Shown one piece after another: positions 20,140-61,983 of a stretch of 64,000 nt of DNA. Position 1 is the stretch's first letter. Each line of letters begins with the position of its first letter. Position numbers and translations under genes: made by a program. Under the pieces are notes generated by a model. The model made no database searches and was not told the origin of the DNA. It saw only the letters and a list, made by a program, of their open reading frames with translations. The stretch spans positions 62,001-126,000 of the IMG/VR virus record IMGVR_UViG_3300028840_002431; one strand, given 5' to 3'.

Positions 20140-20463
20140 ATGGTTGAAGCCACCGTAGTTGCCGACCGGTACGCCGCCGCTAAGGTCAAGAAAATCAAGG
20201 ACCAGGGGTGGGATATTACCGTCCCGGTCATCCAGGGGGCCGCTGCCGTCGATGGTGCTGTGGAAGTGTACGCCGAAAAAGACGGGGTAAAGCTGAAACT
20301 CCGCTACTGGTTCGAGCGGTATACCCGCCGTGTCTTTCTCAAGGCCGAAGGCGTCTTCAATGTGGCCATGCCTCGACAGAACCTCGAACGACAAATCCCG
20401 TCCGCCTTCAAGAAAATGATCCGACGCCACGTCCTGAGGCACATCGACAAGCTACCCAGATAG
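20140..20463 (+). CDS. hypothetical protein (VxxRYAAA tag)
   Basis: MVEATVVADRYAAA. Confidence 0.7.
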   Translation: MVEATVVADRYAAAKVKKIKDQGWDITVPVIQGAAAVDGAVEVYAEKDGVKLKLRYWFERYTRRVFLKAEGVFNVAMPRQNLERQIPSAFKKMIRRHVLRHIDKLPR

Positions 20464-20546
20464 TGCGAGAAGAGGGACTCGAACCCTCACGCCCTCTCGG
20501 ACACCTGATTTTGAGTCAGGCGCGTCTGCCATTCCGCCACTCTCGC
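20464..20546 (-). tRNA. tRNA-Leu(CAA)
   Basis: Type II cloverleaf. Confidence 0.94.
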
Positions 20547-20583: not shown

Positions 20584-20835
20584 ATGGACCCAAGAAAAGC
20601 CTTTGAGCAAGCTCTTACAGCCTCCAAACCTCTGGCCGAAGCCTTCGAGGAACTTGACCGGGCCTCAGACCACGCCAATGGCCTACAACTGGCGCTCGTT
20701 AATGCTCGCCGCGTTATGAAAATGGAAGAGATTGACCGGAACGAGATAAGAGAGATCGAAAAGCTCACGCGCACCGCCGAGACCCTTCTGAGTGATGTAA
20801 ACGACTTTAGATACAAGTTGAAGATGAAGTATTAA
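20584..20835 (+). CDS. hypothetical protein (PRKAFE tag)
   Basis: MDPRKAFEQAL, shared with 32367..32672. Confidence 0.7.
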   Translation: MDPRKAFEQALTASKPLAEAFEELDRASDHANGLQLALVNARRVMKMEEIDRNEIREIEKLTRTAETLLSDVNDFRYKLKMKY

Positions 20836-21274
20836 CACACTCACATTCCGCCAACACAGCGACGGCTACAAACCTTCCGTGGTAGGCAAATGACTCTTGA
20901 CCCCCTGGCATCCTAGAGGCCAGCAATCGAGCCTCTGTGTCCCGTTTGCCTATTGCCGTTATGGACCCAGCGGTCCAGGCGTGCGCGAAGTCATCGTTCG
21001 TCTCCACGCATACCTGAACCGTCTGACGCTTCCAATGAACCGCCACTTTATCCGCCCATCCTTGTACCTCGAATAATACGGGGATGAACACCGCCGACGG
21101 GTCGAGCCTTTTACATGCCTTGTAGGCTGCTTCTTTACAGGCCCATAACCCCCACCGAATGTGCCTGGACTCGATCAGTTGTTTCTCGGCTCTTGTAAAG
21201 ATTCGAGAGTCGGAACGAGGATGCACTCGAAACGTTCTGGGGTCTCTCAGGTCTACGATGTCGTTACCGACCAT
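20807..21274 (-). CDS. 4'-phosphopantetheinyl transferase
   Basis: VGNDIVD and WACKEAAYKA motifs. Confidence 0.88.
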   Translation of the reverse strand: MVGNDIVDLRDPRTFRVHPRSDSRIFTRAEKQLIESRHIRWGLWACKEAAYKACKRLDPSAVFIPVLFEVQGWADKVAVHWKRQTVQVCVETNDDFAHAWTAGSITAIGKRDTEARLLASRMPGGQESFAYHGRFVAVAVLAECECVNTSSSTCI

Positions 21275-21518
21275 CGAGCTTGGCCGCAATCATGTCGATA
21301 ACGTGATGCATGTGCTTGAAAGTGACAACCTCTTCGTCCGTCAACTCGATCCCAAACTCATCCTCGAATTCCATAGAGGCGTCTACCATGTGGGAGGAAT
21401 CGACCCCAAGCTCCTTTTTTAAATGTTGTTCGGGCGTCGCTGTTGGCATGGCTTCCGGCTCGTCCGAGTAAGGAGTAAGAATCTCGACCACCTTCTGTAA
21501 AATTTCATCCTTGCTCAT
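21264..21518 (-). CDS. acyl carrier protein
   Basis: ELGVDS, MEFEDEFGIEL, ATGA overlap with KS. Confidence 0.92.
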   Translation of the reverse strand: MSKDEILQKVVEILTPYSDEPEAMPTATPEQHLKKELGVDSSHMVDASMEFEDEFGIELTDEEVVTFKHMHHVIDMIAAKLDGR

Positions 21519-22774
21519 CACTTCTCCCATTTGCGTAACACAATCACGCTGTTCACATCACCGAAGCCGAAGTTTGCTTTGAGTGCAATGTAGAGAGGCT
21601 TCTCCTCCGTTTGGTGGGGGACACGTTGATCCTCAATTTCGGGGATAGGATCTTCACAGTTTATCGAAGGGTGTATGAAATCGCCTCTCAACATGAGACA
21701 ACAAGCGGCGACCTCGATTCCTCCCGCTGCCTGAAGCGTGTGACCCAAGAGAGACTTCGTTGAATGTATGTAAGGGAGGTCGGAGTCCCCGTAAACCTCT
21801 CGCCAACACCGTACTTCCAGGGCGTCTGCCATCGTGCCAGTCAGATGGCCGTTTATGAAGCTGACATCGAGAGGTCTGATTTTCGCGTTGACGAGAGCCT
21901 TTCGTATACAACGCTGGACGGCGTTCAGGTTTGGGGCCGTCATGCTGCCGCCCTCCCGTTGCGCCCCGCAGTTCGTGTGGTGTCCTAACACTTCGGCGTA
22001 GATTCGAGCACCTCTACGTTCCGCGCTTTCGAGTCTTTCGAGCACCACAACACCAGCCCCGCCGCTGGGCACGAGGCCGGTTGCCGACTTGCTCATAGGG
22101 CGGCTCGCTTTATGAGGCTCGTCCTTGTAGCCTTTCGCTGTCACACGTACAGCGTCCAGGGCCGCCCAGGCGTAGGGTCCGCTGCCTTCGGCCCCGCCGC
22201 ACACCATCCTGTCGGCGTAGCCGTGTTGGATATGCCTCACACCATCCAGGATGGCCGCCAGCCCGGTAGCGCTCGTGGAACTGGCAGCGATTACCTTGTT
22301 CCCCAAACCTAGAAACTCAGCGGTACGGGCCACAATGCCTTCTGACAAGGTCCGGTGAACATGCTTTGCACCCAGCCTACGCACGTTGCCTGAGACAACG
22401 GCCGGGGACAAATCTTCCGCCAAAGCGCGATGTCCGGCATGGCTCCCTGAGCCGATTACGGCTCCTGAGTCCCAGTCAGGAGGCCCCTCTCCCAAAGGCG
22501 GGACCTCAAGCCCGGCGTCTTCCCATGCCTTGACCGCAGCGATACAACCATAACGGTTGACATCGTCCATGTAGGCCAACCGGTTTTTTGGGAAGTAGAC
22601 TTCCGCCAACGTGTCCGTGGCCTCCGGGATACCCGCCACTTGGCACCGGAAGTTTTCCAAATCTTCGTGATAGGCGATTCCGGACCGACCCTCCCGCAGA
22701 TTCTTTTCGAACTCGCCTAAAGTGTTACCAAGGGCGGTAACAACACCCAGCCCGGTGATCACGACCCTTTCCAT
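21518..22774 (-). CDS. FabF-like ketosynthase with active-site Cys replaced by Ser
   Basis: RVVITGLG, SSTSATG (normally xxACxxG), INGHLTGT, KSLLGH, NFGFG. Confidence 0.9.
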   Translation of the reverse strand: MERVVITGLGVVTALGNTLGEFEKNLREGRSGIAYHEDLENFRCQVAGIPEATDTLAEVYFPKNRLAYMDDVNRYGCIAAVKAWEDAGLEVPPLGEGPPDWDSGAVIGSGSHAGHRALAEDLSPAVVSGNVRRLGAKHVHRTLSEGIVARTAEFLGLGNKVIAASSTSATGLAAILDGVRHIQHGYADRMVCGGAEGSGPYAWAALDAVRVTAKGYKDEPHKASRPMSKSATGLVPSGGAGVVVLERLESAERRGARIYAEVLGHHTNCGAQREGGSMTAPNLNAVQRCIRKALVNAKIRPLDVSFINGHLTGTMADALEVRCWREVYGDSDLPYIHSTKSLLGHTLQAAGGIEVAACCLMLRGDFIHPSINCEDPIPEIEDQRVPHQTEEKPLYIALKANFGFGDVNSVIVLRKWEK

Positions 22775-22783
22775 GTCGCGGTT

Positions 22784-23368
22784 CTACACCGAATTATATG
22801 GTTCTTTACCTGACCACTGAGCCAATGTGATTTTGGACCGCCAAACGCCACCAATATGGGCGGCGATACTTCGCGGCGGCTGGTCCAGTGTGGCTCTTTC
22901 GTAAGTGACCATCAGCGACTCACCGGCCCACACAGGCGCGAGAGTATGCAGGTTTCTGAGCCACTGGCACGTTCGTACCAACAAGATGGATTGTGTTCTC
23001 AAGGCACCATGGTCGTCTGAGGGCAACGTCTTATAGTTGTCCATGGCGTAAGCTTCTTGTTCGTCGATCACCTTACGAGGCGTTGCCGCTCTCAGAGTAT
23101 GATGCCTGATCATTGCTTCGGATGCTGGCGTAGGAAAGAGGTCTCTAACAGAGTCCAAGAACATGGCTTTGGCTCCGTCCGGGTTACACAGGGAGAACAC
23201 GTGGAGCCAGTATTGAGGAAACCGGCGATTCAGGTTGTACCACTCCGCCATGGTATCGACGCTGGGCTTCTCGACGAGCGTAACCCCATGCTCGCACCAG
23301 TAAGCGTCCGGCCCCTCCGCCCGTAGCGTTTTGAGCCTGTCAAGAAGCTCAGTGACCTGTGGTTCCAC
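22784..23368 (-). CDS. hypothetical protein
   Basis: 194-aa ORF contiguous with neighbours. Confidence 0.6.
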   Translation of the reverse strand: MEPQVTELLDRLKTLRAEGPDAYWCEHGVTLVEKPSVDTMAEWYNLNRRFPQYWLHVFSLCNPDGAKAMFLDSVRDLFPTPASEAMIRHHTLRAATPRKVIDEQEAYAMDNYKTLPSDDHGALRTQSILLVRTCQWLRNLHTLAPVWAGESLMVTYERATLDQPPRSIAAHIGGVWRSKITLAQWSGKEPYNSV

Positions 23369-23370
23369 GT

Positions 23371-24030
23371 TTAGATAGGACCGCTGGGCTGGTACTCTAT
23401 GATGGACATCTCGCAGAAGAGATCCACGGTGGCCGCTCCAGAACTCTGCGATTGGACTTCAATCTCAATGTTACCGCCCTTCCCCTTGTTCTTCGTTATG
23501 GAAATACGATAACCGTCCATCTCTTCGTAGTAGGTGGCTGTAGCGGTCAAAGTGGAAACGCCAACGCTCATACGACCCATCGCACCGCCGCTTTTATAAC
23601 AGGGGTAGTATGAAGGGCCATCGGGGGGAAGCATCGTTATTTGATACTTCATTGCCCAGATGCACGGATCATTGGCAAACACGTACGATAGAACGACGAG
23701 CGGTCCCTTGGAGAAACCTGGAATGACGTTGGTAACTCTGTCGATTTTCAGGATCGACGGGGCAGCGTCAAGGGTGGTCTGATCGGTAATTGAATCGAGG
23801 GAAACCCCAATGTCGATCGGCGCTCCACCACCTGCGATCGAGCCGCCGCTCGTGATTTGGATCTCGTTACCGGCGTCGTCCTGGGTGAATAATTCGGCTA
23901 TCCCGCTTACGTCCTTGGCGTACAACCTGTGGATGTTTGCCAAGACTCCCGGTGTGGCCTGTTCGGAAAGGTCTACCGGAACAGCCTCCTGACCGATAAC
24001 GGTTCCTATTTCAGATTTCTTGACACCCAT
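23371..24030 (-). CDS. putative virion fibre/decoration protein
   Basis: Shares LYAKDVSGIAELF..GNEIQITSGGSIA module with 46485..47951. Confidence 0.6.
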   Translation of the reverse strand: MGVKKSEIGTVIGQEAVPVDLSEQATPGVLANIHRLYAKDVSGIAELFTQDDAGNEIQITSGGSIAGGGAPIDIGVSLDSITDQTTLDAAPSILKIDRVTNVIPGFSKGPLVVLSYVFANDPCIWAMKYQITMLPPDGPSYYPCYKSGGAMGRMSVGVSTLTATATYYEEMDGYRISITKNKGKGGNIEIEVQSQSSGAATVDLFCEMSIIEYQPSGPI

Positions 24031-24089: not shown

Positions 24090-24175
24090 GGTGCTGGGGA
24101 CAGGAGTCGAACCTGCACGGTCTCTCGACCACTGGAGTCTGAGTCCAGCGCGGCTGCCTATTACGCCACCCCAGC
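24090..24175 (-). tRNA. tRNA-Leu(CAG)
   Basis: Type II cloverleaf, loop CTCAGAC. Confidence 0.92.
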
Positions 24176-24178
24176 ATG

Positions 24179-24248
24179 TTTCCTAGTAGGCCACATCCAT
24201 TGGGTACCCTGAGTAGGATTCGAACCTACGTGGAACGCTACTAGGAAA
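24179..24248 (-). ncRNA. small T-arm RNA closed by an 11-bp terminal stem
   Basis: TTTCCTAGTAG/CTACTAGGAAA, CCAC/GTGG, GTAGG TTCGAAT CCTAC. Confidence 0.65.
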
Positions 24249-24325
24249 TGGTACGGGGAGCCGGGGTCGAACCGACGACTTCCTCCTTGTAAGAGAGGCA
24301 CTCTGGCCAACTGAGTTATCCCCGC
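24249..24325 (-). tRNA. tRNA-Val(TAC)
   Basis: Cloverleaf, CCA. Confidence 0.93.
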
Positions 24326-24542: not shown

Positions 24543-25619
24543 ATGTCAGATCAACCGACCGTCATCGCCCTGAAAGAGCTTCTCAAGAAACACGAAGGCT
24601 GGAAGGCCCTGTTAGAAGACTCCATCTCAGAGGCCAAGAAAGAGGCCGTGAGGGGTGGGATTCGGGACGCCGACAAGTTCCCAGAAGGCTTGGAAGGCAA
24701 ACACGGTTATTATCACTACCTGAACGAGATGGTCCAGTGGTGCCCCAGAGAAGACTACGACAAGGAGTGCTTCTACATGCTGGCCAAGTTCTACTGGCTG
24801 TTAGACCAGCCGTCTGGCCGGAAGCTCCAAGAGTCGGACGAGTTCAATACCTGGATGCGTAACTTTGCCGACGACTGGGGAAGCTACCTGAACACAACCG
24901 ACTCGGCCAAGTACATCCAGACCTTTATTGACGACCCGGCCTTCAATGCATGGCAGTACATGAAGAACCCGTCGGGCTGGCTCACCTTCAACCAGTTCTT
25001 CGGCCGGGAAATCAGCCAGGGCCTACGTCCCGTGGCCGGTATGAAGAACGACGACATTATCACATCCCCGGCCGACTCCGTCTTCAAGGAGAAGTTCCAC
25101 ATCACCGACGATGACGAGATCATCATAAAGCTCACCCACCGGTACAAGATCATCGACCTGTTGGAGGACAGTCCCTTCAAGGAGGACTTCCGGGGTGGCC
25201 TCTTCATGCATTCGTTCCTGGGTCCGAACGACTACCACCGGTTCCGTGCTCCCGTGGCCGGGACCGTCCTTGAGTGCCGGGCCATCCAACAGAACGTCTA
25301 TCTGGATGTGCAAATCCGGGACGGACATTTCACCGCTCCGGACGGGGGTGGGTACGAGTTCACCCAGACCCGTGGGCTGATCATCTTCGACTCGCCCGTT
25401 GGCCTAGTGGCCGTTCTGCCGATCGGCATGGCTCAGGTCTCGTCCGTGAACATGACCGCCGTGGAAGGGGCCTATCTCCAGAAGGGTGAGGAGTTCGGCT
25501 ACTTCTTGTTTGGCGGCTCCGACATTATCATGCTCTTCCAGGCCGACAGCGGGGTCGAGATCACCTGTGCGCCGGGCATCCACTACAACTGTGGGATGTG
25601 CGTGGGAGAGGTGCTCTAG
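24543..25619 (+). CDS. psd: phosphatidylserine decarboxylase family proenzyme
   Basis: TFNQFFGR, SPAD, FLGPNDYHRFRAP, KGEEFGYFLFGGSD self-cleavage motif. Confidence 0.92.
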   Translation: MSDQPTVIALKELLKKHEGWKALLEDSISEAKKEAVRGGIRDADKFPEGLEGKHGYYHYLNEMVQWCPREDYDKECFYMLAKFYWLLDQPSGRKLQESDEFNTWMRNFADDWGSYLNTTDSAKYIQTFIDDPAFNAWQYMKNPSGWLTFNQFFGREISQGLRPVAGMKNDDIITSPADSVFKEKFHITDDDEIIIKLTHRYKIIDLLEDSPFKEDFRGGLFMHSFLGPNDYHRFRAPVAGTVLECRAIQQNVYLDVQIRDGHFTAPDGGGYEFTQTRGLIIFDSPVGLVAVLPIGMAQVSSVNMTAVEGAYLQKGEEFGYFLFGGSDIIMLFQADSGVEITCAPGIHYNCGMCVGEVL

Positions 25620-25909
25620 CGTTTCCGCCAGCCGCCGTTCGCTCTAGACCGCCAATACTGAATCCAGTTAGTGCTACAGGTCTTGCACCGGTATAGCGAA
25701 GCATCTCGTATAGGTCGTCTGTCCCGCTCCAGGAGTCCCTTACAGTCAGGGCACTCGTACCCCCCGTCTGTCTTGGTGGGCTGTTCTTCGGACCCGTACA
25801 AGCCAGCGTGGAGACGCCGACCCGGAGGGTGTTCGAGAGCCTCGAAAAGCCGGTTTGACGCTTTCGCTACAGCGTCAGGATCGCTGAGTAATTTTGGTTT
25901 GTCGGACAT
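25616..25909 (-). CDS. zinc-ribbon hypothetical protein
   Basis: CPDC..CKTC, start MSDKPK (the longer ORF overlaps tmRNA). Confidence 0.6.
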   Translation of the reverse strand: MSDKPKLLSDPDAVAKASNRLFEALEHPPGRRLHAGLYGSEEQPTKTDGGYECPDCKGLLERDRRPIRDASLYRCKTCSTNWIQYWRSRANGGWRKR

Positions 25910-26025
25910 GGGTATAATTGATTGGCCTTGAAACGCACAATCTGGCCTGATCGGGACCAGCACGGGTGCCCTGTGCATCTTCACCCTACCCGGCACCGAA
26001 TAGGGTACGTGTTCCAGGGCCAATC

Positions 26026-26405
26026 GGTGGAGTCGGCGGGAATCGAACCCGCGTCCGAAAGTGCTACTAATTACCACCTCTACGTGTGTAGCTCCATTTC
26101 GTGTCTTTGACAGGAACACCACCGGAGCGGGCAAAACCTGGGGGCGGCCTCACGGCTGCCACTTCCACCACTGGTCTAAACAACCTTGATTGAGGACGAC
26201 CAGAGACTGCGCCTCAACTGCACCGGCTAATCGTCGCCCCATCCAAAGACGCCGGATTCTCTGGCGGGACGCCCTAGGCCGCGATGGCCAGGGGTGCTGC
26301 GTTATCGTTCGCAGTTATGTTTGAGCGGCTTGATAACCCGGCCAGCCGATCAACCGGGACACGCAGTAGTAAATTCCACACCTCCGTCGAAACCTTTACG
26401 ACCCC
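26026..26405 (-). ncRNA. ssrA: tmRNA, one-piece, tag ANDNAAPLAIAA (26274..26312)
   Basis: 5' GGGGTCGTAAAGGTTTCGAC, 3' GGACGCGGGTTCGATTCCCGCCGACTCCACC, G3-U70, resume context ATAACT GCG. Confidence 0.96.
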
Positions 26406-27990: not shown

Positions 27991-28563
27991 TTACTTTCGG
28001 TTCGGCCGCCCACGACCTTTATTCAGAGCCTTATAAGTGGGCGTCAAAGCATGGCAGTTAGGGCATATCAATCTAAGATTCTCTTCAGTGTTGTTTTTAT
28101 GGTCTCCGTCCACATGATCGACCTCAAGAGGTATCTTCTGACCCATCCACGTCTTTCGGCCACAACTCGCACATCTGTACTCTCTAGTCCGTAACAGATA
28201 CCGGCGAATATTGGCTGAATTTTTGATATCTTCTAGTTTCTTCCGCCGACTGGAAAGATGTACCCCCTCGTCGATACAGTCTCTACAATACTTGTTCTTA
28301 CCCGACGGCTTGCCGCACGCAGCGCAATATCTCGGGTCCTTAATTACCCGGTGCCTCGTGAAGTTGACGTATTTACCCGCGCAGGAATGGTTACAAAATT
28401 TGCCATAGCGTTTCTCGTAAGGCAGAGGCTCCCCGCACAATTTACATTTAGGGGCAGCTTGTTCGTGTTTGCGTACGGCTTCGTCGTGCCTTTTTTGACG
28501 GCACTTGTCTAAGACTTTGCTAACCTTCGCGTAACCTTTCTTTCCCGCCGCGCTATGATCCAT
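27991..28563 (-). CDS. HNH endonuclease
   Basis: LEVDHVDGDHKNNTEENLRLICPNCH, several Zn motifs. Confidence 0.9.
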   Translation of the reverse strand: MDHSAAGKKGYAKVSKVLDKCRQKRHDEAVRKHEQAAPKCKLCGEPLPYEKRYGKFCNHSCAGKYVNFTRHRVIKDPRYCAACGKPSGKNKYCRDCIDEGVHLSSRRKKLEDIKNSANIRRYLLRTREYRCASCGRKTWMGQKIPLEVDHVDGDHKNNTEENLRLICPNCHALTPTYKALNKGRGRPNRK

Positions 28564-35940: not shown

Positions 35941-36656
35941 CGTTCCTCCTGAGGCAATTCTTCCACGAGGCGCATAACTTCTTGTGCAACTTCTAACTCC
36001 CGGAGCCTTTCCCGGAGCTTAGGTGAGTGGGCTTGGATCGCTGGCATGGGGCCTTCTGACTCCAACCCCCACGCATCCCAGCCCCTGTATTGGAACCGGG
36101 CAAACAATTCGATACGAGGGATGTCTCCGAACAACTCCTCGATACGTTCCCTGGCCTCCGGAGGCTTCTCGGAATGCCGGGGCGGCCTAGGGGCGAAGAT
36201 CAGTTGTCCCTGGCTCTCCGTTTCGAGAGGCAACGTCCGCCCCTTTGCCTCAGTGGACCCTATAATAACCAACTCCGACTCTTCGGGAGGCTCCGTCGAA
36301 CCAACGATTACCAGTTCCGTTGTCGGCTTGACGAAGGAGGGTCTGACCCCCTGTCCTTTAATTATACGCCCGTCCTTCGTGGTCTTGATCCAGATGTAAC
36401 CAATACCACGATAGAAGAAGTCCCACATCCGCAGTAGGTCCACGGCTTCGTCCAGCTTGGGGCCGGTCGCCCACATGAAGATAACACCAGGAGGATCGAT
36501 AAGGCTGTGAACCGGGAGCTTCACAAGCTCGTCGAAGGGCATCATATTGAAGTGCTTGCCCGCCGCCTGATCCTTGTCCGGGTCTCCATAGTAATCCCAC
36601 GGAGGGTCCAGGTATATGAGCTTATAACGCCCGGCGAGCGACGCGAGTTCAATCAT
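35937..36656 (-). CDS. MT-A70 family adenine methyltransferase
   Basis: LIYLDPPW, HSEKP, RIELFAR, GWDAWG. Confidence 0.92.
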   Translation of the reverse strand: MIELASLAGRYKLIYLDPPWDYYGDPDKDQAAGKHFNMMPFDELVKLPVHSLIDPPGVIFMWATGPKLDEAVDLLRMWDFFYRGIGYIWIKTTKDGRIIKGQGVRPSFVKPTTELVIVGSTEPPEESELVIIGSTEAKGRTLPLETESQGQLIFAPRPPRHSEKPPEARERIEELFGDIPRIELFARFQYRGWDAWGLESEGPMPAIQAHSPKLRERLRELEVAQEVMRLVEELPQEER

Positions 36657-38142
36657 CTTGTTCCAAGTCGAACATCAATTCAAAAGCCTCTCGCTGAGAG
36701 GCTTCGTCGGCTTTGGTTTCCAGTTCCGGCTTCAAGGCCAACAAGCGTTTCCTCGCCAGCGCATGAGATTCTGGGTCCTTCTCGATACCTATGAAGTTAC
36801 ACCTAGAAGCGATGGCCGCCGCACACGTTGTCCCGGTTCCGCAGTAAGGGTCCAACACAACACCATCTACAGGGGTCACGAGTTTGACAAGCCACTCCAT
36901 GAGCTTCAACGGCTTCATGGTCGGGTGTTTGTTGTCTTCGTCGCCGGGCAACCATCCCCCACGCTCGCGTTTATTCACCTTAGCCGCGTACAGGAACGGC
37001 TCCTCAGGCTGGAACTGGCCGAAGTAATGAGGAGAGTCGGATTTCTGACGCTCCAACGCCTTGGCAGGGCACCCCTCCGCACACCTGTAGATAGGAAGCT
37101 CCTCCATGCCTTCGACGTCGCCGCGATGCTCAGAACTGTACGGATGCCCCGCTCCATCTCCAAACGGCTTCATGCCATCGTCAAAGCGGTTGATAACCGG
37201 AGCCTGTACTTTCTTATACCCTACGATCTTACAGCCGTCCGCATGTGTGACAACAAGGTTGGATGGCCAGCGCCCCTGATCCGTAAACGTAGCCCCAGTG
37301 CCGCGCCTGTAACCGGACCCGCCTTGTCCAACTCCCCACCCCTTTCCGTTTCTTACAGTACGAACTCCAGCCGTCGCTTGTCTTCGTCCGCTTGTTATTC
37401 TAGTGGCATCTATGTTGTATGCTCCGGTGCCGTGCGCCAATACATTGGAAGCCACCGTTGATTCTTCCAAAGGTTTCCGAAAAACGAGTATAGGCTCCCA
37501 CGATGGCTTGAGTGCCGTACCCCAACCCTCCCACGCCCATGCTTCTTTCGTCGCAGGGACTGTGATTGGAGCCTTGGACCAATCCATACGGTCACGCTCG
37601 TCGTGTCGCCCTTCTATCTCCCTCCAATTCTCGCTGATGGCGGCCGACGTACGCTTCTTCCCGTCGTATCTACCCCTAGGATCGTAGGTGCCCACCACCT
37701 GTCGTTTGGCCCCGGCCTCCTCATCGATGGCTTTTGATATATTACGGGACTTGGGGAAGCCTTGTCCGTAGACCCATTGCAGAACCGTACAGGCGAATTG
37801 CGAGGCCACTGTGTCCCGGTTCTCGAACCCAGCGGCTCTGATCCCCAAGGAGATGAGGTCAGAAGTCCGGGTCCCGCCAAAACTCAACAGGTGGCCGCCC
37901 GGTTTCAACACCCGGAAACACTCTTTCCACACGGAAACAGACGGGATGTGCCAGTCCCGGCCCATGAAATCCCCACCCGTATCGAGGTCGGAGTCTCCTG
38001 AGAGATAGGCTATAATCTCGTCGATTCCCGGTTCCCGGTCGCCAAGACCGTAAGGAGGATCGGTGACAATAGAGTCCACGGAAGCGTCCGGCAGCGTCCG
38101 GAGAACCTCTAGACACGTCCCCAGTAGAATCGAGTTCAACAC
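36649..38142 (-). CDS. N4/N6 DNA methyltransferase (beta class)
   Basis: VTDPPYG, HPTMKP, VLDPYCGTGTT. Confidence 0.93.
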   Translation of the reverse strand: MLNSILLGTCLEVLRTLPDASVDSIVTDPPYGLGDREPGIDEIIAYLSGDSDLDTGGDFMGRDWHIPSVSVWKECFRVLKPGGHLLSFGGTRTSDLISLGIRAAGFENRDTVASQFACTVLQWVYGQGFPKSRNISKAIDEEAGAKRQVVGTYDPRGRYDGKKRTSAAISENWREIEGRHDERDRMDWSKAPITVPATKEAWAWEGWGTALKPSWEPILVFRKPLEESTVASNVLAHGTGAYNIDATRITSGRRQATAGVRTVRNGKGWGVGQGGSGYRRGTGATFTDQGRWPSNLVVTHADGCKIVGYKKVQAPVINRFDDGMKPFGDGAGHPYSSEHRGDVEGMEELPIYRCAEGCPAKALERQKSDSPHYFGQFQPEEPFLYAAKVNKRERGGWLPGDEDNKHPTMKPLKLMEWLVKLVTPVDGVVLDPYCGTGTTCAAAIASRCNFIGIEKDPESHALARKRLLALKPELETKADEASQREAFELMFDLEQDD

Positions 38143-43857: not shown

Positions 43858-44359
43858 GTTCCATCACTTCCCGAAGAACCGTCAGCGCCTTACCGGCCGC
43901 CTTCTCTGTCATACCTTGGGATACGATGGTGATGCCCGTCTCGGAGGGAGCTAACACCACGCCCTTGGGAACACCCTTTTCTTCCAACCTTTTGATGGCA
44001 CACTCGGCGGTACGTATGACCTGCCTTGCCCGTGCCTCTTCTTGCCGGGCTTTGGCCTCGATGTCCAAACACTTGACAATGTGGTTGATGATCTTGTCTA
44101 CCGGTAGGAGGCCCGCCTTGTTCTGCCGAAACCGTTTGATTTCCGTATGCTCGGTTTTCACCCGGAAAACGTGGATCATGCTCCCCATGACCTGGAGATC
44201 AAGGCGGACCTTGTCCCTACCGATATTAACAACAATCGAGTCGCGGCGAGAAGTGTCAAAAGGACCTAACTGCTCCTGCGTTCTATACATACGTCTGGTT
44301 CGACGCTGAACACCGTCCAGAATCTCCTGTTGCAGTTTAACAGGGTCCACCATCACCAT
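43775..44359 (-). CDS. hypothetical protein
   Basis: 194 aa, coupled to the phosphoesterase. Confidence 0.65.
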   Translation of the reverse strand: MVMVDPVKLQQEILDGVQRRTRRMYRTQEQLGPFDTSRRDSIVVNIGRDKVRLDLQVMGSMIHVFRVKTEHTEIKRFRQNKAGLLPVDKIINHIVKCLDIEAKARQEEARARQVIRTAECAIKRLEEKGVPKGVVLAPSETGITIVSQGMTEKAAGKALTVLREVMEPRDESKRRGLLWDYLQDPDEPESEKDT

Positions 44360-45204
44360 CAGTCGTCACCGATGCACACCTTGTTAAAATACACCTTCTT
44401 CGGGTACACCTGGACGAACTCTGGGTCAGTTGGAAGCGACTGAGGCAAGACCATCGCGGTGAGCGGACCACCGTACGCGCACCCGGTGTCGATGCCGTAG
44501 CAACAGCCACCAGGAAACCGGTCGATACGAGGATTTTTAAAGTCGGCTACGGCGTGCCCGTAGATGACACTCTCCGGACCCTTCCATAGCTCGGTCCAGT
44601 AGACCATCCCGATGGCAGCGTCATCCAGAGTGGCCTCCCGTGTGAAAGCCGGGAGAAGCCGGGACGGACAACTGTCGAAGAATTTCTTAGGTAGTGACGT
44701 GAACGCCCGACGAGGAGTTCTTGACCCCTTCTTCCAACCGACGAACTTCCCCGTCTCGTCCACAAACCGAACCCGTAGAACGCCCTTCTTCTGATCCTCG
44801 AAGGAGAACATCGGCTCCAGGCCGCCATGGACCACGACCATACCGTTCTCAAGGTTCAGGGTCATCGGGAGATTGGCCATCCACTCCATCTCCTCGTCGG
44901 TGAAGGCCGCATTCTCGGCGGCCCGCTCCGGAGGAAACGGACGCATGGGATTCTTTTTACCGGTGATTTTACGGACCGCCTCGTGCTTCCGCCACCGGAT
45001 GTGCTTCTCCTCATGGTTCCCCATGACGACGGTAGCGCCGCACTCTCTGGCGAAGCGTACACATCCGACGGAGTCAGGTCCCCGATCCACGAGGTCCCCA
45101 ACCGAGACGAGCCTGTCCCTCCCTTTGGAAAAGGACAGTAATTTCAGTAGCTCACGGAACTCATCGAGGCAACCGTGAACGTCGCCTATGACAATCGTAC
45201 GCAT
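44359..45204 (-). CDS. metallophosphoesterase (ApaH/PrpA/Pnkp-like)
   Basis: GDVHG, GDLVDRG, GNHE, VHGG, YGH, IDTGC. Confidence 0.93.
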   Translation of the reverse strand: MRTIVIGDVHGCLDEFRELLKLLSFSKGRDRLVSVGDLVDRGPDSVGCVRFARECGATVVMGNHEEKHIRWRKHEAVRKITGKKNPMRPFPPERAAENAAFTDEEMEWMANLPMTLNLENGMVVVHGGLEPMFSFEDQKKGVLRVRFVDETGKFVGWKKGSRTPRRAFTSLPKKFFDSCPSRLLPAFTREATLDDAAIGMVYWTELWKGPESVIYGHAVADFKNPRIDRFPGGCCYGIDTGCAYGGPLTAMVLPQSLPTDPEFVQVYPKKVYFNKVCIGDD

Positions 45205-45250: not shown

Positions 45251-45907
45251 TTATGGGATCGGTGCAACTTTGGGCGGCCTCAGGGAATAAAGAACCTCTT
45301 CGGCTTCGTGGTTGGCGACCGCCTTCCGCACCTTCTCAGGGACATCCTTACCATTCGAGATAGCCCAACGCACTAAGTTCGTATGAGCCTTGAGGAACGT
45401 CCCCACCGCCATAATATTAATGTGCTGGGTGGAGATGTCCAAAACTCTAGGAGTCTCCCGGAACCACTGCTCTACGAGCCTCGTAGCCAAACCTTGTCTT
45501 CGGTACCCGTCACGAACAATGATCTCATGCCAATGGCGAGTCATGTTGCCGGGAATTACATAAGAGCCAATGATCAAGGCCCCATCAAACACAATGACCC
45601 CGGCTCTATTATCCCCCGTCAACGGGATCTCTGGGCATCGATCGTGAATCGGGAAGATGCTCACCGCTTTCGAGGTGTCCGAAACCCCAAGCTGATAAGT
45701 GTAGGGGGTCCCCTCAAGAGGGCGTTTAGGCCCCTTAAAAGGAACCGTCGGTAACGAGACCACATTAGGAACAGCACGCCTCAGTACAAAACAAGCGTAA
45801 AGTTCTCTTGGGGTTAACGTCCAACGATAGGCTATCTCAGACGCCAACGGAGCCTCGCCGCTGTAGCAGACGGCGGCGACTCCGGGCTGGCGCTCCCTCA
45901 CGGGCAT
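45251..45907 (-). CDS. GNAT acetyltransferase (paralog 1, true start uncertain)
   Basis: VRDGYRRQGLAT. Confidence 0.7.
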   Translation of the reverse strand: MPVRERQPGVAAVCYSGEAPLASEIAYRWTLTPRELYACFVLRRAVPNVVSLPTVPFKGPKRPLEGTPYTYQLGVSDTSKAVSIFPIHDRCPEIPLTGDNRAGVIVFDGALIIGSYVIPGNMTRHWHEIIVRDGYRRQGLATRLVEQWFRETPRVLDISTQHINIMAVGTFLKAHTNLVRWAISNGKDVPEKVRKAVANHEAEEVLYSLRPPKVAPIP

Positions 45908-46472
45908 TCAGTTTCGCCATAATCTCCTGGGCTTCCGTTCCGGCAGCCACCGCATCCCTGACGTTTTGCGGGACAGGCTTTCCGGCAGCAACAGCCCAGG
46001 TTACAACATTGGAATGCGCCCTGATGAAAGTCTTACACGCCATGAAATTGATAGGTTGTTGGGTCGTATCGACAACGCCGGGGACCTCTTTTTGCCACTG
46101 CTCGATCAGCTTCGTACCCAACCCTTGTTGGCGGAACTCTTCCCGAACAATGATTTGCCTTACACCAGGGCCAACGTTACCTGAGATTATATAGGACGCG
46201 ATAACGAAGTGTCCCTTGTAGATAATGACACCCGCTCTTCTATCACCCGAGAGCGGGATGTTTGGGTACTCCGCATGAATCGGCGCTATGTCCGATGCCA
46301 CAGAAGTATCAGAAACAGCGCACTGATACATGTAAGGTGTTCCCTCAAGAGGTCGCTTGGGACACGCGAAGGGAATCGTCGCCAATGCTGCGCGAGCCGT
46401 TGTGCTATGCACTGGCCTGAAACAGGCGTAAAGTTCTTTTGGGGTTAACGTCCAACGGTATGCTAGGGGCAT
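45837..46472 (-). CDS. GNAT acetyltransferase (paralog 2)
   Basis: VREEFRQQGLGT, similar along its length to paralog 1. Confidence 0.75.
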   Translation of the reverse strand: MPLAYRWTLTPKELYACFRPVHSTTARAALATIPFACPKRPLEGTPYMYQCAVSDTSVASDIAPIHAEYPNIPLSGDRRAGVIIYKGHFVIASYIISGNVGPGVRQIIVREEFRQQGLGTKLIEQWQKEVPGVVDTTQQPINFMACKTFIRAHSNVVTWAVAAGKPVPQNVRDAVAAGTEAQEIMAKLNAREGAPARSRRRLLQRRGSVGV

Positions 46473-46484
46473 CGATACGTCTCC

Positions 46485-47951
46485 TTAGGACGGGCCGGGC
46501 GGCTCAGGGAGGAACCCGGCGTCAATGGCAAGCGGTATCGGCAACGCAAAACCAAGGGAGGAGTCTAGCAGCCAAGTGCCCACACCATCGGAAATCAACC
46601 TAAGAGGCTCATAAGTTGACCACACAACGGCAGTCTCACCCGCCCCCAAATCTGGTGAGACAGCGTCTCCCGGCGCTGGCTGCACAACGACTACAGCACC
46701 GGAAGTACCCGTCTTCTTCTTGGCTTTCTTGGACAGGTAGTTAAGAAACGTTATGGCTTTCGTAGCGCTTTCGGGTGTGATCGGGGGTAGAGTCAGAATA
46801 ACATAACCAGAAGTCGGACTATCGAGTCTGGGCGACCGCCCCGCCACCATGTCATAGAAGTCAACATCAACACGAACCGGCCCCCAACTCGCGTAGTCTT
46901 GCGTGTTATACAGAAGCCAAGACTGAGGGTCAGTGCCCATCACGACGCTCTCGGACTTCGGGTGATTCAAGATCCACGTCGTTCCAAAATATGTGACACC
47001 ACTACTCACAGCCACCGCTATGCCACCCGGTTGGACCGCCCCCTCTTCAAAGGGCGATGGGCGTGTCCAAGCCCCCGTCGCCACGGTCCAGACCCCATTT
47101 TCTATGGGGTCCGTCTGAGCCGAGAGAAGAACAACATCGTCCGCAGCAAGCACCTGACCGTCTATAGTGCTCCCCTCCCCGGAAAGAGATGCAACGTTGG
47201 CCACGGCAACAACGTCGGCGGAGTCAACCGCTGGCGGTGCCGACTCGATAACAATAACCCAATTCTGTGGATCATCGCCAACAGTTATAGGGACACCAGA
47301 CGGGTTCCAGAAAGCCCAGCGTTGAGTTACCTCCGGTGGCCCCGGATCTGTCTCCATCTCGACTATGGCATCCTGAATCGCAGCGCCGGTATCAGCATCG
47401 GGAGCGCGGGTCCAGGCCCCCGACGCAACGATATAGATACCATTTGCTATTTGATCCTCCGTTTGGCTTAACGCACAAGCGCGAAGAACGCGATCACCAG
47501 CCGAAACCACGACGCCTTCTTTGTCCCCCTCACCGGAAAGGTCCGTTGTAGAATCGATAAGAACCTGGACAACGTCAACGAGCGTTGGAACGGTGCTCGT
47601 GGCATCATACAACTCGCCCGGCGTATCGTCCTTCCACTTCATAGTCGCTGTGACGGCCGCTAAACTGCCACCGCTCGTGATTTGGACCTCTTGCCCGAAG
47701 TCGTTTATCGCGAAAAGCTCGGACACACCTCCAACGTTCTTCGAGTAGACCTTCGCAGAACCAGCGGTAGGGTCAGGAGCGTCCGGGAGAACGTTGTATT
47801 GACTGGGACCTCCCGCTGACGTGGCGGGAGTTATCACACCATCGGAGTCTTTGAGGGAAGGATTACCGTTCTCATCCACGAAGAATGTAAGGTGTGAGGG
47901 AGGTGGGGTTGGAACTCCATCACCGGGTCTCTTTTTCAATGCTATCGACAT
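46485..47951 (-). CDS. tail fibre/decoration protein
   Basis: Two copies of the GDRVL..QT..NG(I/V)(Y/W)..GAWTR phage fibre module. Confidence 0.75.
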   Translation of the reverse strand: MSIALKKRPGDGVPTPPPSHLTFFVDENGNPSLKDSDGVITPATSAGGPSQYNVLPDAPDPTAGSAKVYSKNVGGVSELFAINDFGQEVQITSGGSLAAVTATMKWKDDTPGELYDATSTVPTLVDVVQVLIDSTTDLSGEGDKEGVVVSAGDRVLRACALSQTEDQIANGIYIVASGAWTRAPDADTGAAIQDAIVEMETDPGPPEVTQRWAFWNPSGVPITVGDDPQNWVIVIESAPPAVDSADVVAVANVASLSGEGSTIDGQVLAADDVVLLSAQTDPIENGVWTVATGAWTRPSPFEEGAVQPGGIAVAVSSGVTYFGTTWILNHPKSESVVMGTDPQSWLLYNTQDYASWGPVRVDVDFYDMVAGRSPRLDSPTSGYVILTLPPITPESATKAITFLNYLSKKAKKKTGTSGAVVVVQPAPGDAVSPDLGAGETAVVWSTYEPLRLISDGVGTWLLDSSLGFALPIPLAIDAGFLPEPPGPS

Positions 47952-60392: not shown

Positions 60393-60614
60393 TCAGTTGC
60401 TCTCCCGGTCTGGGAGGTCGAACAACTTGGAGAGGTCCTTCGTTATGTCCGCTTCCGTGCGCCCGTAGGTGATGACAGCCTGACCGTCCATCCTGAACGG
60501 CTGTAGGTCGATAACGATCTGCTTGCCCTGCCTCAGGAGTTCGAGGTTGGTTTCGGACAGACCCAGGATAACGACCGGCTTGCCTTCGTTGTTAGTGACG
60601 CCCAGTTTGATCAT
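60393..60614 (-). CDS. small hypothetical protein
   Basis: GGAGG RBS before MIKLG. Confidence 0.6.
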   Translation of the reverse strand: MIKLGVTNNEGKPVVILGLSETNLELLRQGKQIVIDLQPFRMDGQAVITYGRTEADITKDLSKLFDLPDRESN

Positions 60615-60993: not shown

Positions 60994-61012
60994 GGCCTAC
61001 CTTACACCACCG

Positions 61013-61690
61013 TCACCGCTTCTCGAACCGATACCCGAAATACGCAATATCTTTAGCGTATCTCTTTTCCACAATCTCTCTCCGCTTCTCATTGTAGTAT
61101 TTACTGTAGTGTTCGTGGTCGGTCTTTAGTGTATGAGGAAGCGCTGTCTGAGGCAGTCCCAGATCCCGGCACACGCAATCAAAGTCTTCTTGGAGCCGCT
61201 CAAATTGAATAAACCGAAAGGGTGCCTCCACGCCCGGCTGTGTCACGAAGTCCAACACAGGGTCCAGCAATAACCCTTTCCCGGTACCTTGCTTCGGGAA
61301 CTGAGCTTCCGGTCTTCCATCTCTAGTTTCTATAATCCGGAACCAGTGGTCCAAGGACACACGCTCGTACACCTGACTATAATAAAAGTATCCGGAAACG
61401 ACACGATCCCACGGGTTACGAGCGGTAGCAAAAAAATAGAACCGTTTTAACGCTTTCGGGTCAAAAAGACGGGCAAAGTAATCCAGCCTCGCGTGTTTAA
61501 TATCGTCGCCAGAGATACGGACACACACATTATCGTTGTCGAAGTGTGGGTACGACGTTATAACCCCATCGGCGTAGGGAGTCAGAGCAACCTCTATGGA
61601 GTTCCCACCGGTTTTGGCCGGGTGTATAAATATAAAGTTGTGCTTGTAGGAAATCACCCCGCGTGCCTGAATATCTGGAACAGTCCACAC
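61013..61690 (-). CDS. sulfotransferase family 2 protein
   Basis: FIFIHPAKTGGNSI, RNPWDRVVSGYFY, FERLQEDF, DIAYFGY. Confidence 0.9.
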   Translation of the reverse strand: MWTVPDIQARGVISYKHNFIFIHPAKTGGNSIEVALTPYADGVITSYPHFDNDNVCVRISGDDIKHARLDYFARLFDPKALKRFYFFATARNPWDRVVSGYFYYSQVYERVSLDHWFRIIETRDGRPEAQFPKQGTGKGLLLDPVLDFVTQPGVEAPFRFIQFERLQEDFDCVCRDLGLPQTALPHTLKTDHEHYSKYYNEKRREIVEKRYAKDIAYFGYRFEKR

Positions 61691-61947: not shown

Positions 61948-61983
61948 ACGGCGTAATACACCTTTTTTGGCGATCCTAGAACA

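What the first reader, a model, noticed from the sequence alone, without database searches (positions are those of the whole stretch)
20807..22774. Phage-borne ketosynthase (Cys-to-Ser), ACP and PPTase cassette
Seen: three translationally coupled genes behind a GGTGTA motif. The KS keeps both His residues but has SSTSATG at the catalytic Cys site, and the ACP keeps its Ser. Established: Cys-to-Ser KS enzymes in polyketide beta-branching cassettes (PksF type) decarboxylate malonyl-ACP to acetyl-ACP. Inference: the phage makes its own holo/acetyl-ACP to prime lipid synthesis, supply acylation, or act as an ACP decoy. This is unusual cargo for a phage.
Basis: partly seen in the sequence, partly recalled or inferred. 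Interest (0 to 1): 0.62.

Follow-up and report, generated by a model that had tools for sequence, protein, structure and literature searches.

The report
Phage ketosynthase-like decarboxylase, ACP, PPTase
A 416-kb phage carries three genes copied from a bacterial lipid-synthesis cluster (a condensing enzyme, its carrier protein and the carrier's activating enzyme), and the condensing enzyme has lost its catalytic cysteine in a way that probably leaves it only able to turn malonyl-carrier into acetyl-carrier.

Summary
On the minus strand, three overlapping genes encode a KS (21518-22774), an ACP (21264-21530) and an AcpS-like PPTase (20807-21274/21289). A GGTGTA motif that recurs genome-wide precedes them.

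Ser168 (codon AGC) occupies the catalytic Cys position. His310, Lys340, His345 and the gate Phe404 are kept. Three public runs hold the stretch with no differences.

Seven relatives (50-58% identical) come from phage-like contigs, two of which share other genes with this phage. All have Ser, and the five with DNA all use AGC. They form one clade, sister to a 94-member bacterial Cys-containing KS family.

It is not PksF-type. The PksF model scores 194 bits (cut-off 445), a genuine PksF-type KS is only remotely similar, and the phage has no HMGS or ECH.

All three genes are a syntenic fragment of a widespread bacterial auxiliary FAS-II cluster (MAT-SDR-KASIII-FabA-FabZ-KS-ACP-AT-PPTase). In the Ser clade both acyl-pocket gate residues are replaced, while the decarboxylation residues stay invariant. 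This fits a condensation-dead malonyl-ACP decarboxylase.

The physiological role is unknown. In four relatives a PAPS-sulfotransferase-like gene abuts the KS. This is a new variant of a known kind; interest 0.62.

The parts
21518..22774 (-). KS-like gene (418 aa) with Ser168 in place of the catalytic Cys; His310, Lys340, His345 and Phe404 are kept
   Evidence: Pfam KS N+C. The best NCBIfam model is FabF at 271 bits, below its cut-off; the PksF model gives 194 bits against a cut-off of 445. Residue table and alignment blocks. Tree.
22271..22273 (-). Codon AGC = Ser168, at the position of the nucleophilic Cys
   Evidence: Read. The same AGC codon is present in all five Ser-clade genes with DNA. 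No variant appears in three runs.
21264..21530 (-). Acyl carrier protein (88 aa, or 84 aa from the second Met); phosphopantetheine Ser45 in DSS (codon 21396-21398)
   Evidence: PF00550 at 24.1 bits, above its cut-off. PHROG 5934 'acyl carrier protein'. Aligns to solved ACPs. Its best relatives are the ACPs directly downstream of bacterial Cys-family KS genes, at E 1e-16 to 1e-8. The predicted KS2-ACP complex scores ipSAE 0.69 against a best control of 0.00.
20807..21289 (-). AcpS-like phosphopantetheinyl transferase (155 aa from ATG 21274; 160 aa from TTG 21289)
   Evidence: PF01648 at 30.1 bits against a cut-off of 25. It keeps the GNDIVD and W..ACKEAAYKA motifs shared with E. coli AcpS. An HMM built from 67 PPTases of the bacterial cluster scores it 107.7 bits, E 4e-35.
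22785..22790 (-). GGTGTA motif, 10 nt upstream of the KS start codon
   Evidence: 13-fold enriched upstream of ORFs genome-wide. Spacing to the start codon peaks at 9-10 nt.
22784..24030 (-). Two upstream same-strand ORFs (194 aa at 22784-23368; 219 aa at 23371-24030), closely spaced but not part of the conserved cassette
   Evidence: No Pfam, NCBIfam or PHROG hit. No homolog next to the KS of relatives. The 219-aa protein resembles viral proteins of unknown function in the Atlas; nearest clusters that carry a Pfam family include T4 gp9/10-like (baseplate) and Mtd_N, which the tool flags as often chance. The 194-aa protein stays unexplained.
61013..61690 (-). PAPS-sulfotransferase-like gene (225 aa), a possible functional partner: its homologs abut the KS in four relatives, but here it lies 38 kb away
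   Evidence: PF03567 at 23.1 bits against a cut-off of 22. Motifs HPAKTGGNSI and RNPWDRVVS. The block 60411-61959 is collinear with L006, where the KS sits between the 104-aa gene and the sulfotransferase-like gene. Adjacency in P0002, P0003, P0004 and P0006.
20463..20546 (-). tRNA-Leu(caa) flanking the cassette downstream; the cassette lies inside a 44-tRNA array
   Evidence: ARAGORN; Rfam tRNA at 57.4 bits.
24090..24325 (-). tRNA-Leu(cag) and tRNA-Val(tac) flanking the five-ORF block upstream
   Evidence: ARAGORN; Rfam.

Best explanation
The cassette is a piece of a bacterial auxiliary type II fatty-acid-synthase cluster, captured by an ancestor of a group of huge phages and then repurposed. 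In bacteria the cluster reads FabD-like MAT, SDR, KASIII, FabA-like, FabZ-like, KS, ACP, PlsC-like acyltransferase, PPTase. The phage kept only KS, ACP and PPTase.

Proposed mechanism:
1. The PPTase converts the phage ACP to its holo form (inferred from family membership and kept catalytic motifs).
2. A host malonyl-CoA:ACP transacylase loads malonate (inferred; the phage has none).
3. The KS homodimer binds the phage ACP (supported by a predicted complex) and decarboxylates malonyl-ACP to acetyl-ACP without condensation.

Step 3 rests on three points. The thiol nucleophile is replaced by Ser. Both acyl-pocket gate residues are replaced. The His-His-Lys-Phe-Thr machinery that binds and decarboxylates malonyl-ACP is invariant.

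What the cell does with the product is not shown. The likeliest options are FabH-independent priming or boosting of lipid synthesis (as MadA does in Proteobacteria), or draining of malonyl units away from the host pathway.

Shown here: gene identities, the origin, the Ser clade and its residue pattern. Inferred: the decarboxylase activity, the malonyl loading and the physiological role.
For: Origin:
- The KS Ser clade (8 rows) is monophyletic (SH-aLRT 98) and sister to 94 bacterial Cys-KS. The joint stem has support 100 and stands apart from housekeeping FabF.
- The phage ACP's best matches are the ACPs just downstream of those bacterial KS genes.
- The phage PPTase scores 107.7 bits (E 4e-35) against an HMM of 67 PPTases from the same bacterial cluster.
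- Bacteroidota versions have KS-ACP-PPTase directly adjacent, as in the phage.

Decarboxylase reading:
- C163 is Ser in 8 of 8 Ser-clade members.
- H303, H340, K335, F400, T305, T307, D311, E314 and N404 (FabF numbering) are invariant in the Ser clade.
- F202 is L or V in 8 of 8 (F in 94 of 94 Cys relatives). I108 is S/T/G/A in 8 of 8. G107 is E or D in 6 of 8.
- F202 and I108 are the acyl-pocket gating residues, and H303/H340 hold the substrate carbonyl (PMC7138838).
- KS enzymes without condensing activity are known to make acetyl-ACP from malonyl-ACP (PMC10006238).

Selection for Ser: AGC is one step from TGC, yet it is kept in five lineages that are about 50% diverged.

Functional carrier: the ACP Ser is kept, a private PPTase is present, and the KS2-ACP model scores ipSAE 0.69 against a best control of 0.00. 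That mark was reached by 51 of 78 solved complexes and 2 of 108 mismatched pairs. Partner pLDDT was 87-88, the runs agreed in at least 90% of contacts, and ACP residues 44-50 around Ser45 sit at the interface.

Precedent for a priming role: MadA (PMC8666670).
Against: - No activity has been measured.
- A Ser at this position could in principle still be acylated as an oxyester.
- The predicted complex may pass from memory of solved FabF-ACP complexes.
- The phage encodes no malonyl transferase, so loading depends on an unknown host enzyme.
- No consumer of acetyl-ACP was found in the phage. PlsC, hexapeptide, AMP-binding, SDR, HMGS and ECH families are all absent.
- Relatives carry an SDR, an O-methyltransferase or a sulfotransferase-like gene next to the KS. 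That would fit a product-forming pathway better than a bare decarboxylase.
- In five of the seven relatives no ACP was recognised beside the KS, though most contigs are short.
- The PPTase could not be modelled (pLDDT 36).
Confidence: 0.5

Rival explanations
1. The Ser enzyme is still an acyl-transferring or slowly condensing enzyme that uses Ser168 as an oxyester nucleophile. Together with the ACP and tailoring enzymes (sulfotransferase-like, O-methyltransferase or SDR in relatives) it builds a small phage-specified acyl product or envelope modification.
For: Tight, often overlapping linkage of the KS with a PAPS-sulfotransferase-like gene in four relatives, upstream in one and downstream in three. 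An O-methyltransferase lies two genes downstream of the KS in L002 and an SDR fragment lies next to the KS in L001. The sulfotransferase-like gene is also present in this phage. The remodelled pocket could mean a new substrate rather than none.
Against: Both acyl-pocket gate residues and the neighbouring Gly are replaced in non-uniform ways (S/T/G/A; L/V; E/D/G), which looks like relaxation rather than a new fixed pocket. From memory, unverified here: Cys-to-Ser mutants of KAS I lose condensation. No thioesterase or acyltransferase to release a product was found in the phage. In this phage the sulfotransferase-like gene is 38 kb away.
Confidence: 0.2
2. The proteins act mainly by binding, not catalysis. 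The dead KS, alone or as a heterodimer with the host's Cys-KS (like a chain-length factor), and the extra ACP would jam or redirect the host's auxiliary FAS cluster or housekeeping FAS during infection.
For: The cassette derives from a host-type cluster, so cognate host partners probably exist. The KS-ACP interface is predicted to be kept. KS/CLF heterodimers with one non-condensing subunit are a known design (preprint 10.64898/2026.05.19.726425, listed; its abstract only, not read).
Against: Invariance of His310, His345, Lys340, Thr312 and Thr314 across a clade with about 50% divergence is hard to explain without catalysis. A dedicated PPTase implies that the holo-ACP thiol is needed. No heterodimer test was possible.
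Confidence: 0.15
3. It is a PksF-type decarboxylase of a polyketide beta-branching (HMG-synthase) cassette.
For: Ser at the Cys site and a stand-alone ACP next door, as in HCS cassettes.
Against: NF005490 (PksF model) scores 194 bits against a cut-off of 445, below the FabF model at 271 bits. A genuine PksF-type KS (L098, 458 bits, next to an HMGS) gives only 57 bits by BLAST and sits on a distant branch. No HMGS or ECH is present in the 416-kb genome.
Confidence: 0.02
4. Artefact: bacterial DNA mis-assembled into a viral contig, a sequencing error at the Cys codon, or a decaying pseudogene.
For: KS genes are otherwise almost unknown in phages. There is no PHROG family for the KS or the PPTase, and only distant hits of 38% identity or less over the aligned part appear in 28 phage records, many unannotated.
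Against: Identical sequence appears in contigs of three runs. Cassette GC equals genome GC. The phage's own GGTGTA start-codon motif precedes the KS. The cassette is embedded in the phage tRNA array on the same strand. The Ser clade is conserved, with 98 invariant columns. Relatives' contigs share other genes with this phage.
Confidence: 0.02

Closest known systems
Elongating KS, ACP and PPTase of a widespread bacterial auxiliary FAS-II cluster (MAT-SDR-KASIII-FabA-like-FabZ-like-KS-ACP-acyltransferase-PPTase; Gemmatimonadota, Myxococcota, Bacteroidota, Marinicella and others). I found no published name for it.
   Same: All three proteins are homologous: KS about 50% identical, ACP E down to 1e-16, PPTase HMM 107.7 bits. 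The gene order KS-ACP-(AT)-PPTase is the same, as are the 'GHLT.T' and 'GFGDVN' signature motifs.
   Different: The phage KS has Ser for Cys and altered acyl-pocket gates. The phage lacks the MAT, SDR, KASIII, dehydratases and acyltransferase.
PksF/CurC/MupG-type KS of HMG-synthase beta-branching cassettes (NCBIfam NF005490)
   Same: FabF-fold KS with Ser at the nucleophile position and both His kept. It works with a dedicated donor ACP and makes acetyl-ACP from malonyl-ACP (PMC10006238; L098).
   Different: Different KS lineage, so the change is convergent. There are no HMGS or ECH partners. F202 is kept in the PksF-type example but lost in the phage clade.
Chain-length / chain-initiation factor (KS-beta, 'KSQ') of type II and modular PKS
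   Same: A KS paralogue whose Cys is replaced and whose remaining activity is malonyl-ACP decarboxylation for priming (from established knowledge; not tested here).
   Different: Gln rather than Ser. Those enzymes act as an obligate heterodimer with a Cys-KS, whereas the phage has a single KS gene.
MadA/MadB (YiiD) malonyl-ACP decarboxylase
   Same: The proposed reaction and one proposed role are the same: acetyl-ACP for FabH-independent initiation, which promotes envelope lipid synthesis (PMC8666670).
   Different: Unrelated fold. The phage protein hits only KS domains in Pfam, and MadA acts on the host's own ACP.
Phage-encoded ACP modules (PHROG 5934; jumbophage 'host-interface islands')
   Same: A stand-alone ACP carried by large phages (PMC13573597).
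   Different: Those reports describe ACPs without a KS or PPTase. PHROGs has no family matching this KS or PPTase.

Membership tests
PksF-type KS of HCS (beta-branching) cassettes | Scores above the curated cut-off of the family model NF005490 (445 bits) | tested here: not met
   194 bits, lower than the FabF model at 271 bits. The control, a genuine member (L098), scores 458 bits.
PksF-type KS of HCS (beta-branching) cassettes | Ser replaces the nucleophilic Cys while His-His is kept | tested here: met
   S168, H310 and H345. L098 also has Ser (GGASASG).
PksF-type KS of HCS (beta-branching) cassettes | HMG-CoA-synthase homologue and ECH1/ECH2 in the same locus or genome | tested here: not met
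   PF08540 and PF00378 give no match in G000 at E<=1 and E<=0.1. tblastn with the L098 HMGS fragment finds nothing. Caveat: the genome is estimated 87% complete.
PksF-type KS of HCS (beta-branching) cassettes | Groups with family members in a phylogeny | tested here: not met
   L098 sits on a 3.7-unit branch outside the clade of the phage group plus the Cys family. BLAST gives 57 bits. Only one genuine member was available.
Condensing KAS I/II (FabB/FabF-type) enzymes | Thiolase-fold KS N- and C-terminal domains | tested here: met
   PF00109 at 105.8 bits and PF02801 at 88.8 bits. Full-length alignment to solved FabB/FabF at E 5e-57.
Condensing KAS I/II (FabB/FabF-type) enzymes | Cys-His-His catalytic triad | tested here: not met
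   Cys is replaced by Ser168. His310 and His345 are present.
Condensing KAS I/II (FabB/FabF-type) enzymes | Acyl-pocket gating residues F202 and I108 (FabF numbering) | tested here: not met
   L206 and S111 in the window. L/V and S/T/G/A in 8 of 8 Ser-clade members, against F in 94 of 94 Cys relatives. Role of the residues per PMC7138838.
Malonyl-ACP decarboxylating KS variants (functional class) | Measured conversion of malonyl-ACP to acetyl-ACP | not testable with these tools
   Only residue conservation is available: H303, H340, K335, F400, T305 and T307 equivalents are invariant.
Acyl carrier protein (PF00550) | Score above the gathering cut-off and a Ser in the D-S-x motif at the start of helix II | tested here: met
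   24.1 bits against 20.8. D44-S45-S46 aligns with the DSL motif of solved ACPs.
AcpS-type phosphopantetheinyl transferase (PF01648) | Score above the cut-off; Mg-binding Asp in G-x-D and Glu/Lys in the W..KEA..K motif | tested here: met
   30.1 bits against 25. G3-N-D5-IVD and W44-A-C-K47-E48-AAY-K52 align with E. coli AcpS. The structure could not be checked (pLDDT 36; no PDB hit by sequence).
Bacterial auxiliary FAS-II cluster (unnamed) | KS, ACP and PPTase each homologous to the cluster's proteins and in the same order | tested here: met
   KS-ACP-PPTase are adjacent in Bacteroidota versions (L083).
Bacterial auxiliary FAS-II cluster (unnamed) | Full enzyme set (MAT, SDR, KASIII, two dehydratases, acyltransferase) | tested here: not met
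   None of these is found in G000.
MadA/MadB malonyl-ACP decarboxylase | YiiD_C hot-dog domain | tested here: not met
   The Pfam scan of the KS lists only KS and thiolase families.

The most novel reading that the evidence does not exclude
A lineage of huge phages runs its own carrier-protein pathway. A KS turned decarboxylase (or Ser-dependent acyl-transferring enzyme), a private ACP and a private PPTase would work together with the PAPS-sulfotransferase-like enzyme that abuts the KS in four relatives. Together they would make a phage-specified acetylated, acylated or sulfated product, or rewrite a host envelope lipid. That would be the first thiotemplate-type biosynthetic module shown to belong to a phage.
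Probability: 0.2. Interest if true: 0.8.

Novelty: new variant of a known kind. Interest (0 to 1): 0.62.

Why it matters
Carrier proteins alone are known phage cargo. A ketosynthase and a phosphopantetheinyl transferase are not: neither matches any PHROG family, and two jumbo-phage reviews searched by keyword mention neither. The phage therefore imports a complete, self-activating thioester-carrier unit.

The enzyme is also a natural experiment. The same Cys-to-Ser solution seen in polyketide beta-branching cassettes arose independently in another KS family. Here it came with loss of the acyl-pocket gates and strict retention of the decarboxylation residues. That gives enzymologists an independent test of which residues matter for each half-reaction.

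If the module primes or drains host fatty-acid synthesis, it is a new kind of metabolic takeover by huge phages. If it works with the linked sulfotransferase-like enzyme, it points to phage-made lipids or envelope modifications.

It also draws attention to a widespread nine-gene bacterial lipid cluster whose product I could not identify.

Tried and rejected
- IMG/VR scans with the protein and with the Ser-clade alignment found only this same phage (L005).
- The one metagenome-contig scan returned only Cys-type and housekeeping KS. Of the 15 loci I inspected (L104-L117, L139), every one whose match covers the site has Cys. The rest, 31-36% identical to the query, were not inspected, and no new Ser-clade locus was seen. 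Two loci named as gut metagenome contigs were not examined.
- The word search with the PPTase found only itself, and a PDB sequence search found nothing. The blank was resolved by a local HMM from the bacterial loci.
- AF2 on the PPTase without an alignment gave pLDDT 36, so no fold search was run.
- Atlas look-ups left the 194-aa upstream ORF unexplained. The 219-aa ORF resembles only viral proteins of unknown function there. Neither recurs next to the KS of relatives, so I do not count them as part of the cassette.
- The promoter and terminator scan gave nothing above shuffles, so the transcription unit is undefined.
- PADLOC gave no hit for any cassette protein.
- No RNA run holds the stretch, so expression is untested.
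- Paper searches found no report of a phage KS or PPTase.
- The host could not be inferred. The KS clade is sister to the whole bacterial family, and the PPTase placement is unsupported; its nearest relatives are Gemmatimonadota-type at 41% identity.
- The Ser clade therefore rests on eight sequences.
- Complex prediction passed for KS2 + ACP, but similar complexes are solved, so the pass may reflect memory.
Full report
**What is there.** The window is bases 62001-126000 of a single 416,539-bp contig that IMG/VR holds as a virus record, linear, with a CheckV completeness estimate of 87%. The window carries 44 tRNA genes and a tmRNA, all on the minus strand between 2.0 and 31.9 kb. It also carries virion structural proteins, a DNA methyltransferase and a NinI-like phosphatase by PHROGs.

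Inside the tRNA array, on the same strand, lie five closely spaced ORFs. The last three are the finding:
- a ketosynthase at 21518-22774 (418 aa);
- an ACP at 21264-21530 (88 aa);
- a phosphopantetheinyl transferase at 20807-21289 (160 aa from TTG, 155 aa from the ATG at 21274).

Their reading frames overlap. The cassette's GC content equals that of the genome, 55.7% against 55.0%. Contigs from three public runs in three studies (two sediment, one seawater) cover 20600-23400 without a single difference at depth 12-13. They may include the source sample, and two may be one data set filed twice.

**The active site.** Aligned with E. coli FabF and 120 relatives, Ser168 (in SSTSATG, codon AGC at 22271-22273) takes the place of Cys163. 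His310, Lys340, His345 and Phe404 correspond to H303, K335, H340 and F400. ACP Ser45 aligns with the phosphopantetheine Ser of solved ACPs. The PPTase keeps the G-x-D-I-V-D and W..A.KEAA.KA motifs of E. coli AcpS.

**The GGTGTA motif.** The motif lies 10 nt before the KS start codon. It is a real feature of this phage. It occurs upstream of 28 of 372 long ATG ORFs against 2.1 expected, and its distance to the start codon peaks sharply at 9-10 nt.

**The Ser is not a lone mutation.** A word search and a profile search of 5.8 billion proteins found seven relatives that are 50-58% identical to the window protein: P0002-P0006, P0021 and P0121. In the first search the next 113 proteins listed, and in the profile search the 112 proteins ranked below the Ser group, are bacterial proteins of about 425 aa at 47-53% identity.

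All seven relatives have Ser at the site. All the bacterial proteins checked have Cys: 113 of the first search's list and the 94 rows of the tree alignment. Ser168 is invariant in the alignment. The five genes for which I hold DNA all use AGC. This fits a single TGC-to-AGC event that has been kept, although reversion needs only one base change.

In a maximum-likelihood tree of 112 KS sequences, the eight Ser sequences form one clade (SH-aLRT 98). That clade is sister to the 94 Cys sequences, on a long joint stem (support 100) away from housekeeping FabF.

The relatives sit on contigs full of small unannotated ORFs, with CHAP and M23 peptidases, sigma-70 region 4 proteins and a Cpn10. Several of their neighbouring genes have homologs elsewhere in this phage at 46-78% identity. 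I therefore take the Ser clade to belong to a group of related huge phages.

**It is not PksF-type.**
- The curated PksF model (NF005490) scores 194 bits against a cut-off of 445, less than the FabF model at 271 bits.
- I fetched a genuine member from a Myxococcota genome (L098, 458 bits, next to an HMG-synthase gene, active-site GGASASG). It gives only 57 bits by BLAST against the phage KS and sits on a distant branch.
- The phage genome has no HMG-synthase and no ECH.

The Cys-to-Ser change is therefore convergent.

**Where the cassette came from.** The bacterial Cys relatives occur in Gemmatimonadota, Myxococcota, Bacteroidota, Marinicella, Acidobacteriota, Bdellovibrionota and others. They lie in a conserved cluster. 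In a Longimicrobiales genome the order is SDR, KASIII, two FabA-fold dehydratases, KS, ACP, PlsC-like acyltransferase. These genes recur in 50-83 of about 80 loci.

In Marinicella gelatinilytica, NCBIfam adds a FabD-like malonyl transferase at the front and a PPTase at the end.

The phage ACP's best relatives are the ACPs immediately downstream of these KS genes (E 1e-16 to 1e-8). The phage PPTase had no relatives by word search. It scores 107.7 bits (E 4e-35) against an HMM that I built from 67 PPTases of this cluster, with an almost identical N-terminus.

In Bacteroidota versions, KS, ACP and a 155-180-aa PPTase are directly adjacent, as in the phage. All three phage genes are thus one syntenic fragment of a bacterial auxiliary type II FAS cluster. 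The phage has none of the other cluster enzymes.

**How it most likely works.** Within the Ser clade, the residues that bind and decarboxylate malonyl-ACP are invariant: H303, H340, K335, F400, T305, T307, D311, E314 and N404 in FabF numbering.

The acyl side of the site has been remodelled:
- F202 is Leu or Val in 8 of 8, against Phe in 94 of 94 Cys relatives.
- I108 is Ser, Thr, Gly or Ala in 8 of 8.
- The neighbouring G107 is Glu or Asp in 6 of 8.

F202 and I108 are described as the gating residues of the FabF acyl pocket, and H303/H340 hold the substrate carbonyl (PMC7138838). Condensation-inactive KS enzymes that make acetyl-ACP from malonyl-ACP are established in beta-branching cassettes (PMC10006238).

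A model of the KS dimer with the ACP scored ipSAE 0.69 against a best control of 0.00. That mark was reached by 51 of 78 solved complexes and 2 of 108 mismatched pairs. Partner pLDDT was 87-88 and the runs agreed in at least 90% of contacts. ACP residues 44-50 around Ser45 lie at the interface across both protomers. Similar complexes are solved, so this shows likeness rather than proof.

I therefore read the module as follows. The PPTase makes holo-ACP. A host malonyl transferase loads it. The KS decarboxylates malonyl-ACP to acetyl-ACP without condensing. The activity, the loading step and the fate of the product are inferred, not shown.

Two physiological readings are open. One is FabH-independent priming that boosts lipid synthesis, as MadA does (PMC8666670). 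The other is a drain on malonyl units. A private PPTase argues against a pure apo-ACP decoy.

In four of the seven relatives a gene of about 210-230 aa abuts or overlaps the KS gene. It lies upstream in P0002 and downstream in P0003, P0004 and P0006. It carries PAPS-sulfotransferase motifs (HPAKTGGNSI, RNPWDRVVS; Pfam Sulfotransfer_2).

This phage has the same gene at 61013-61690. It sits in a block (60411-61959) collinear with contig L006, except that in L006 the KS lies between the 104-aa gene and the sulfotransferase-like gene. Here the KS lies 38 kb away with the ACP and PPTase.

One relative has an O-methyltransferase two genes downstream of the KS; another has an SDR fragment next to it. 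This recurrent linkage is the main evidence for the rival view that the enzyme feeds a product-forming pathway.

**Verdict.** I classify the cassette as a new variant of a known kind, namely a convergent Cys-to-Ser KS carried with its ACP and PPTase by huge phages.

No PHROG family matches the KS or the PPTase. Phage records hold only distant KS hits. The papers I could search describe phage ACPs but no phage KS or PPTase.

Noticed in passing
window 2058-31894, minus strand: An array of 44 tRNA genes covering all 20 amino acids, plus a tmRNA, all on one strand and interspersed with small ORFs and an HNH endonuclease (27991-28563). Some anticodons are unusual for bacteria: Asp(atc), Leu(aag) twice, Ile(tat).
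   Followed up: partly
window 26025-26405 (-) and 25655-26119 (-): The tmRNA is confirmed by Rfam (136 bits; tag ANDNAAPLAIAA). ARAGORN's second, overlapping 'permuted tmRNA' call at 25655-26119 has no Rfam support and is probably false.
   Followed up: yes
genome-wide; e.g. window 22785-22790, 61957-61962, 61003-61008 (minus strand): GGTGTA (often CGGTGTA[A/G]) sits 9-10 nt before start codons far more often than expected (28 of 372 ORFs against 2.1). The spacing is too long for the usual Shine-Dalgarno register. It could be a phage-specific translation signal, or a promoter for nearly leaderless mRNAs.
   Followed up: partly
window 24543-25619 (+): A phosphatidylserine-decarboxylase-family gene (PF02666 E 2.7e-41, plus the PSDC N-domain) with a G-G-S motif at the expected self-cleavage site. 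It lies 1.8 kb from the cassette on the other strand. It is far below every NCBIfam equivalog cut-off, so the substrate is uncertain.
   Followed up: partly
window 60411-61959 (-); L006 515-4279: A four-gene block (104-aa ORF, sulfotransferase-like gene, 131-aa ORF, 72-aa ORF) is collinear with metagenomic contig L006 at 54-78% identity. L006 has its Ser-type KS inserted between the first two genes, so the KS has moved within this phage group.
   Followed up: yes
window 45251-45907 (-) and 45837-46472 (-): Two adjacent ORFs of about 215 aa with weak GNAT acetyltransferase matches (20.7 and 16.7 bits), next to a virion structural protein gene (46485-47951).
   Followed up: no
L043 3964-10980; L011 4990-10328; about 80 bacterial loci L009-L088: A conserved bacterial cluster (FabD-like MAT, SDR, KASIII, FabA-like, FabZ-like, KS, ACP, PlsC-like acyltransferase, PPTase) is spread over at least eight phyla. 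I could not find its product or a name for it.
   Followed up: partly
L002 2080-3192 and 3376-3711; G000 247460-247750: In relative L002 the Ser-type KS is followed by a 75-aa ORF that is not an ACP, a natural-product-type O-methyltransferase (Dimerisation + Methyltransf_2) and a DUF6166 protein. The DUF6166 protein has a 46%-identical homolog elsewhere in this phage. DUF6166 also directly follows the KS of P0121.
   Followed up: partly
window 36649-38142 (-), 44359-45204 (-): A DNA methyltransferase (PHROG 67, E 1e-63) and a NinI-like Ser/Thr phosphatase (PHROG 246, E 4e-32).
   Followed up: no
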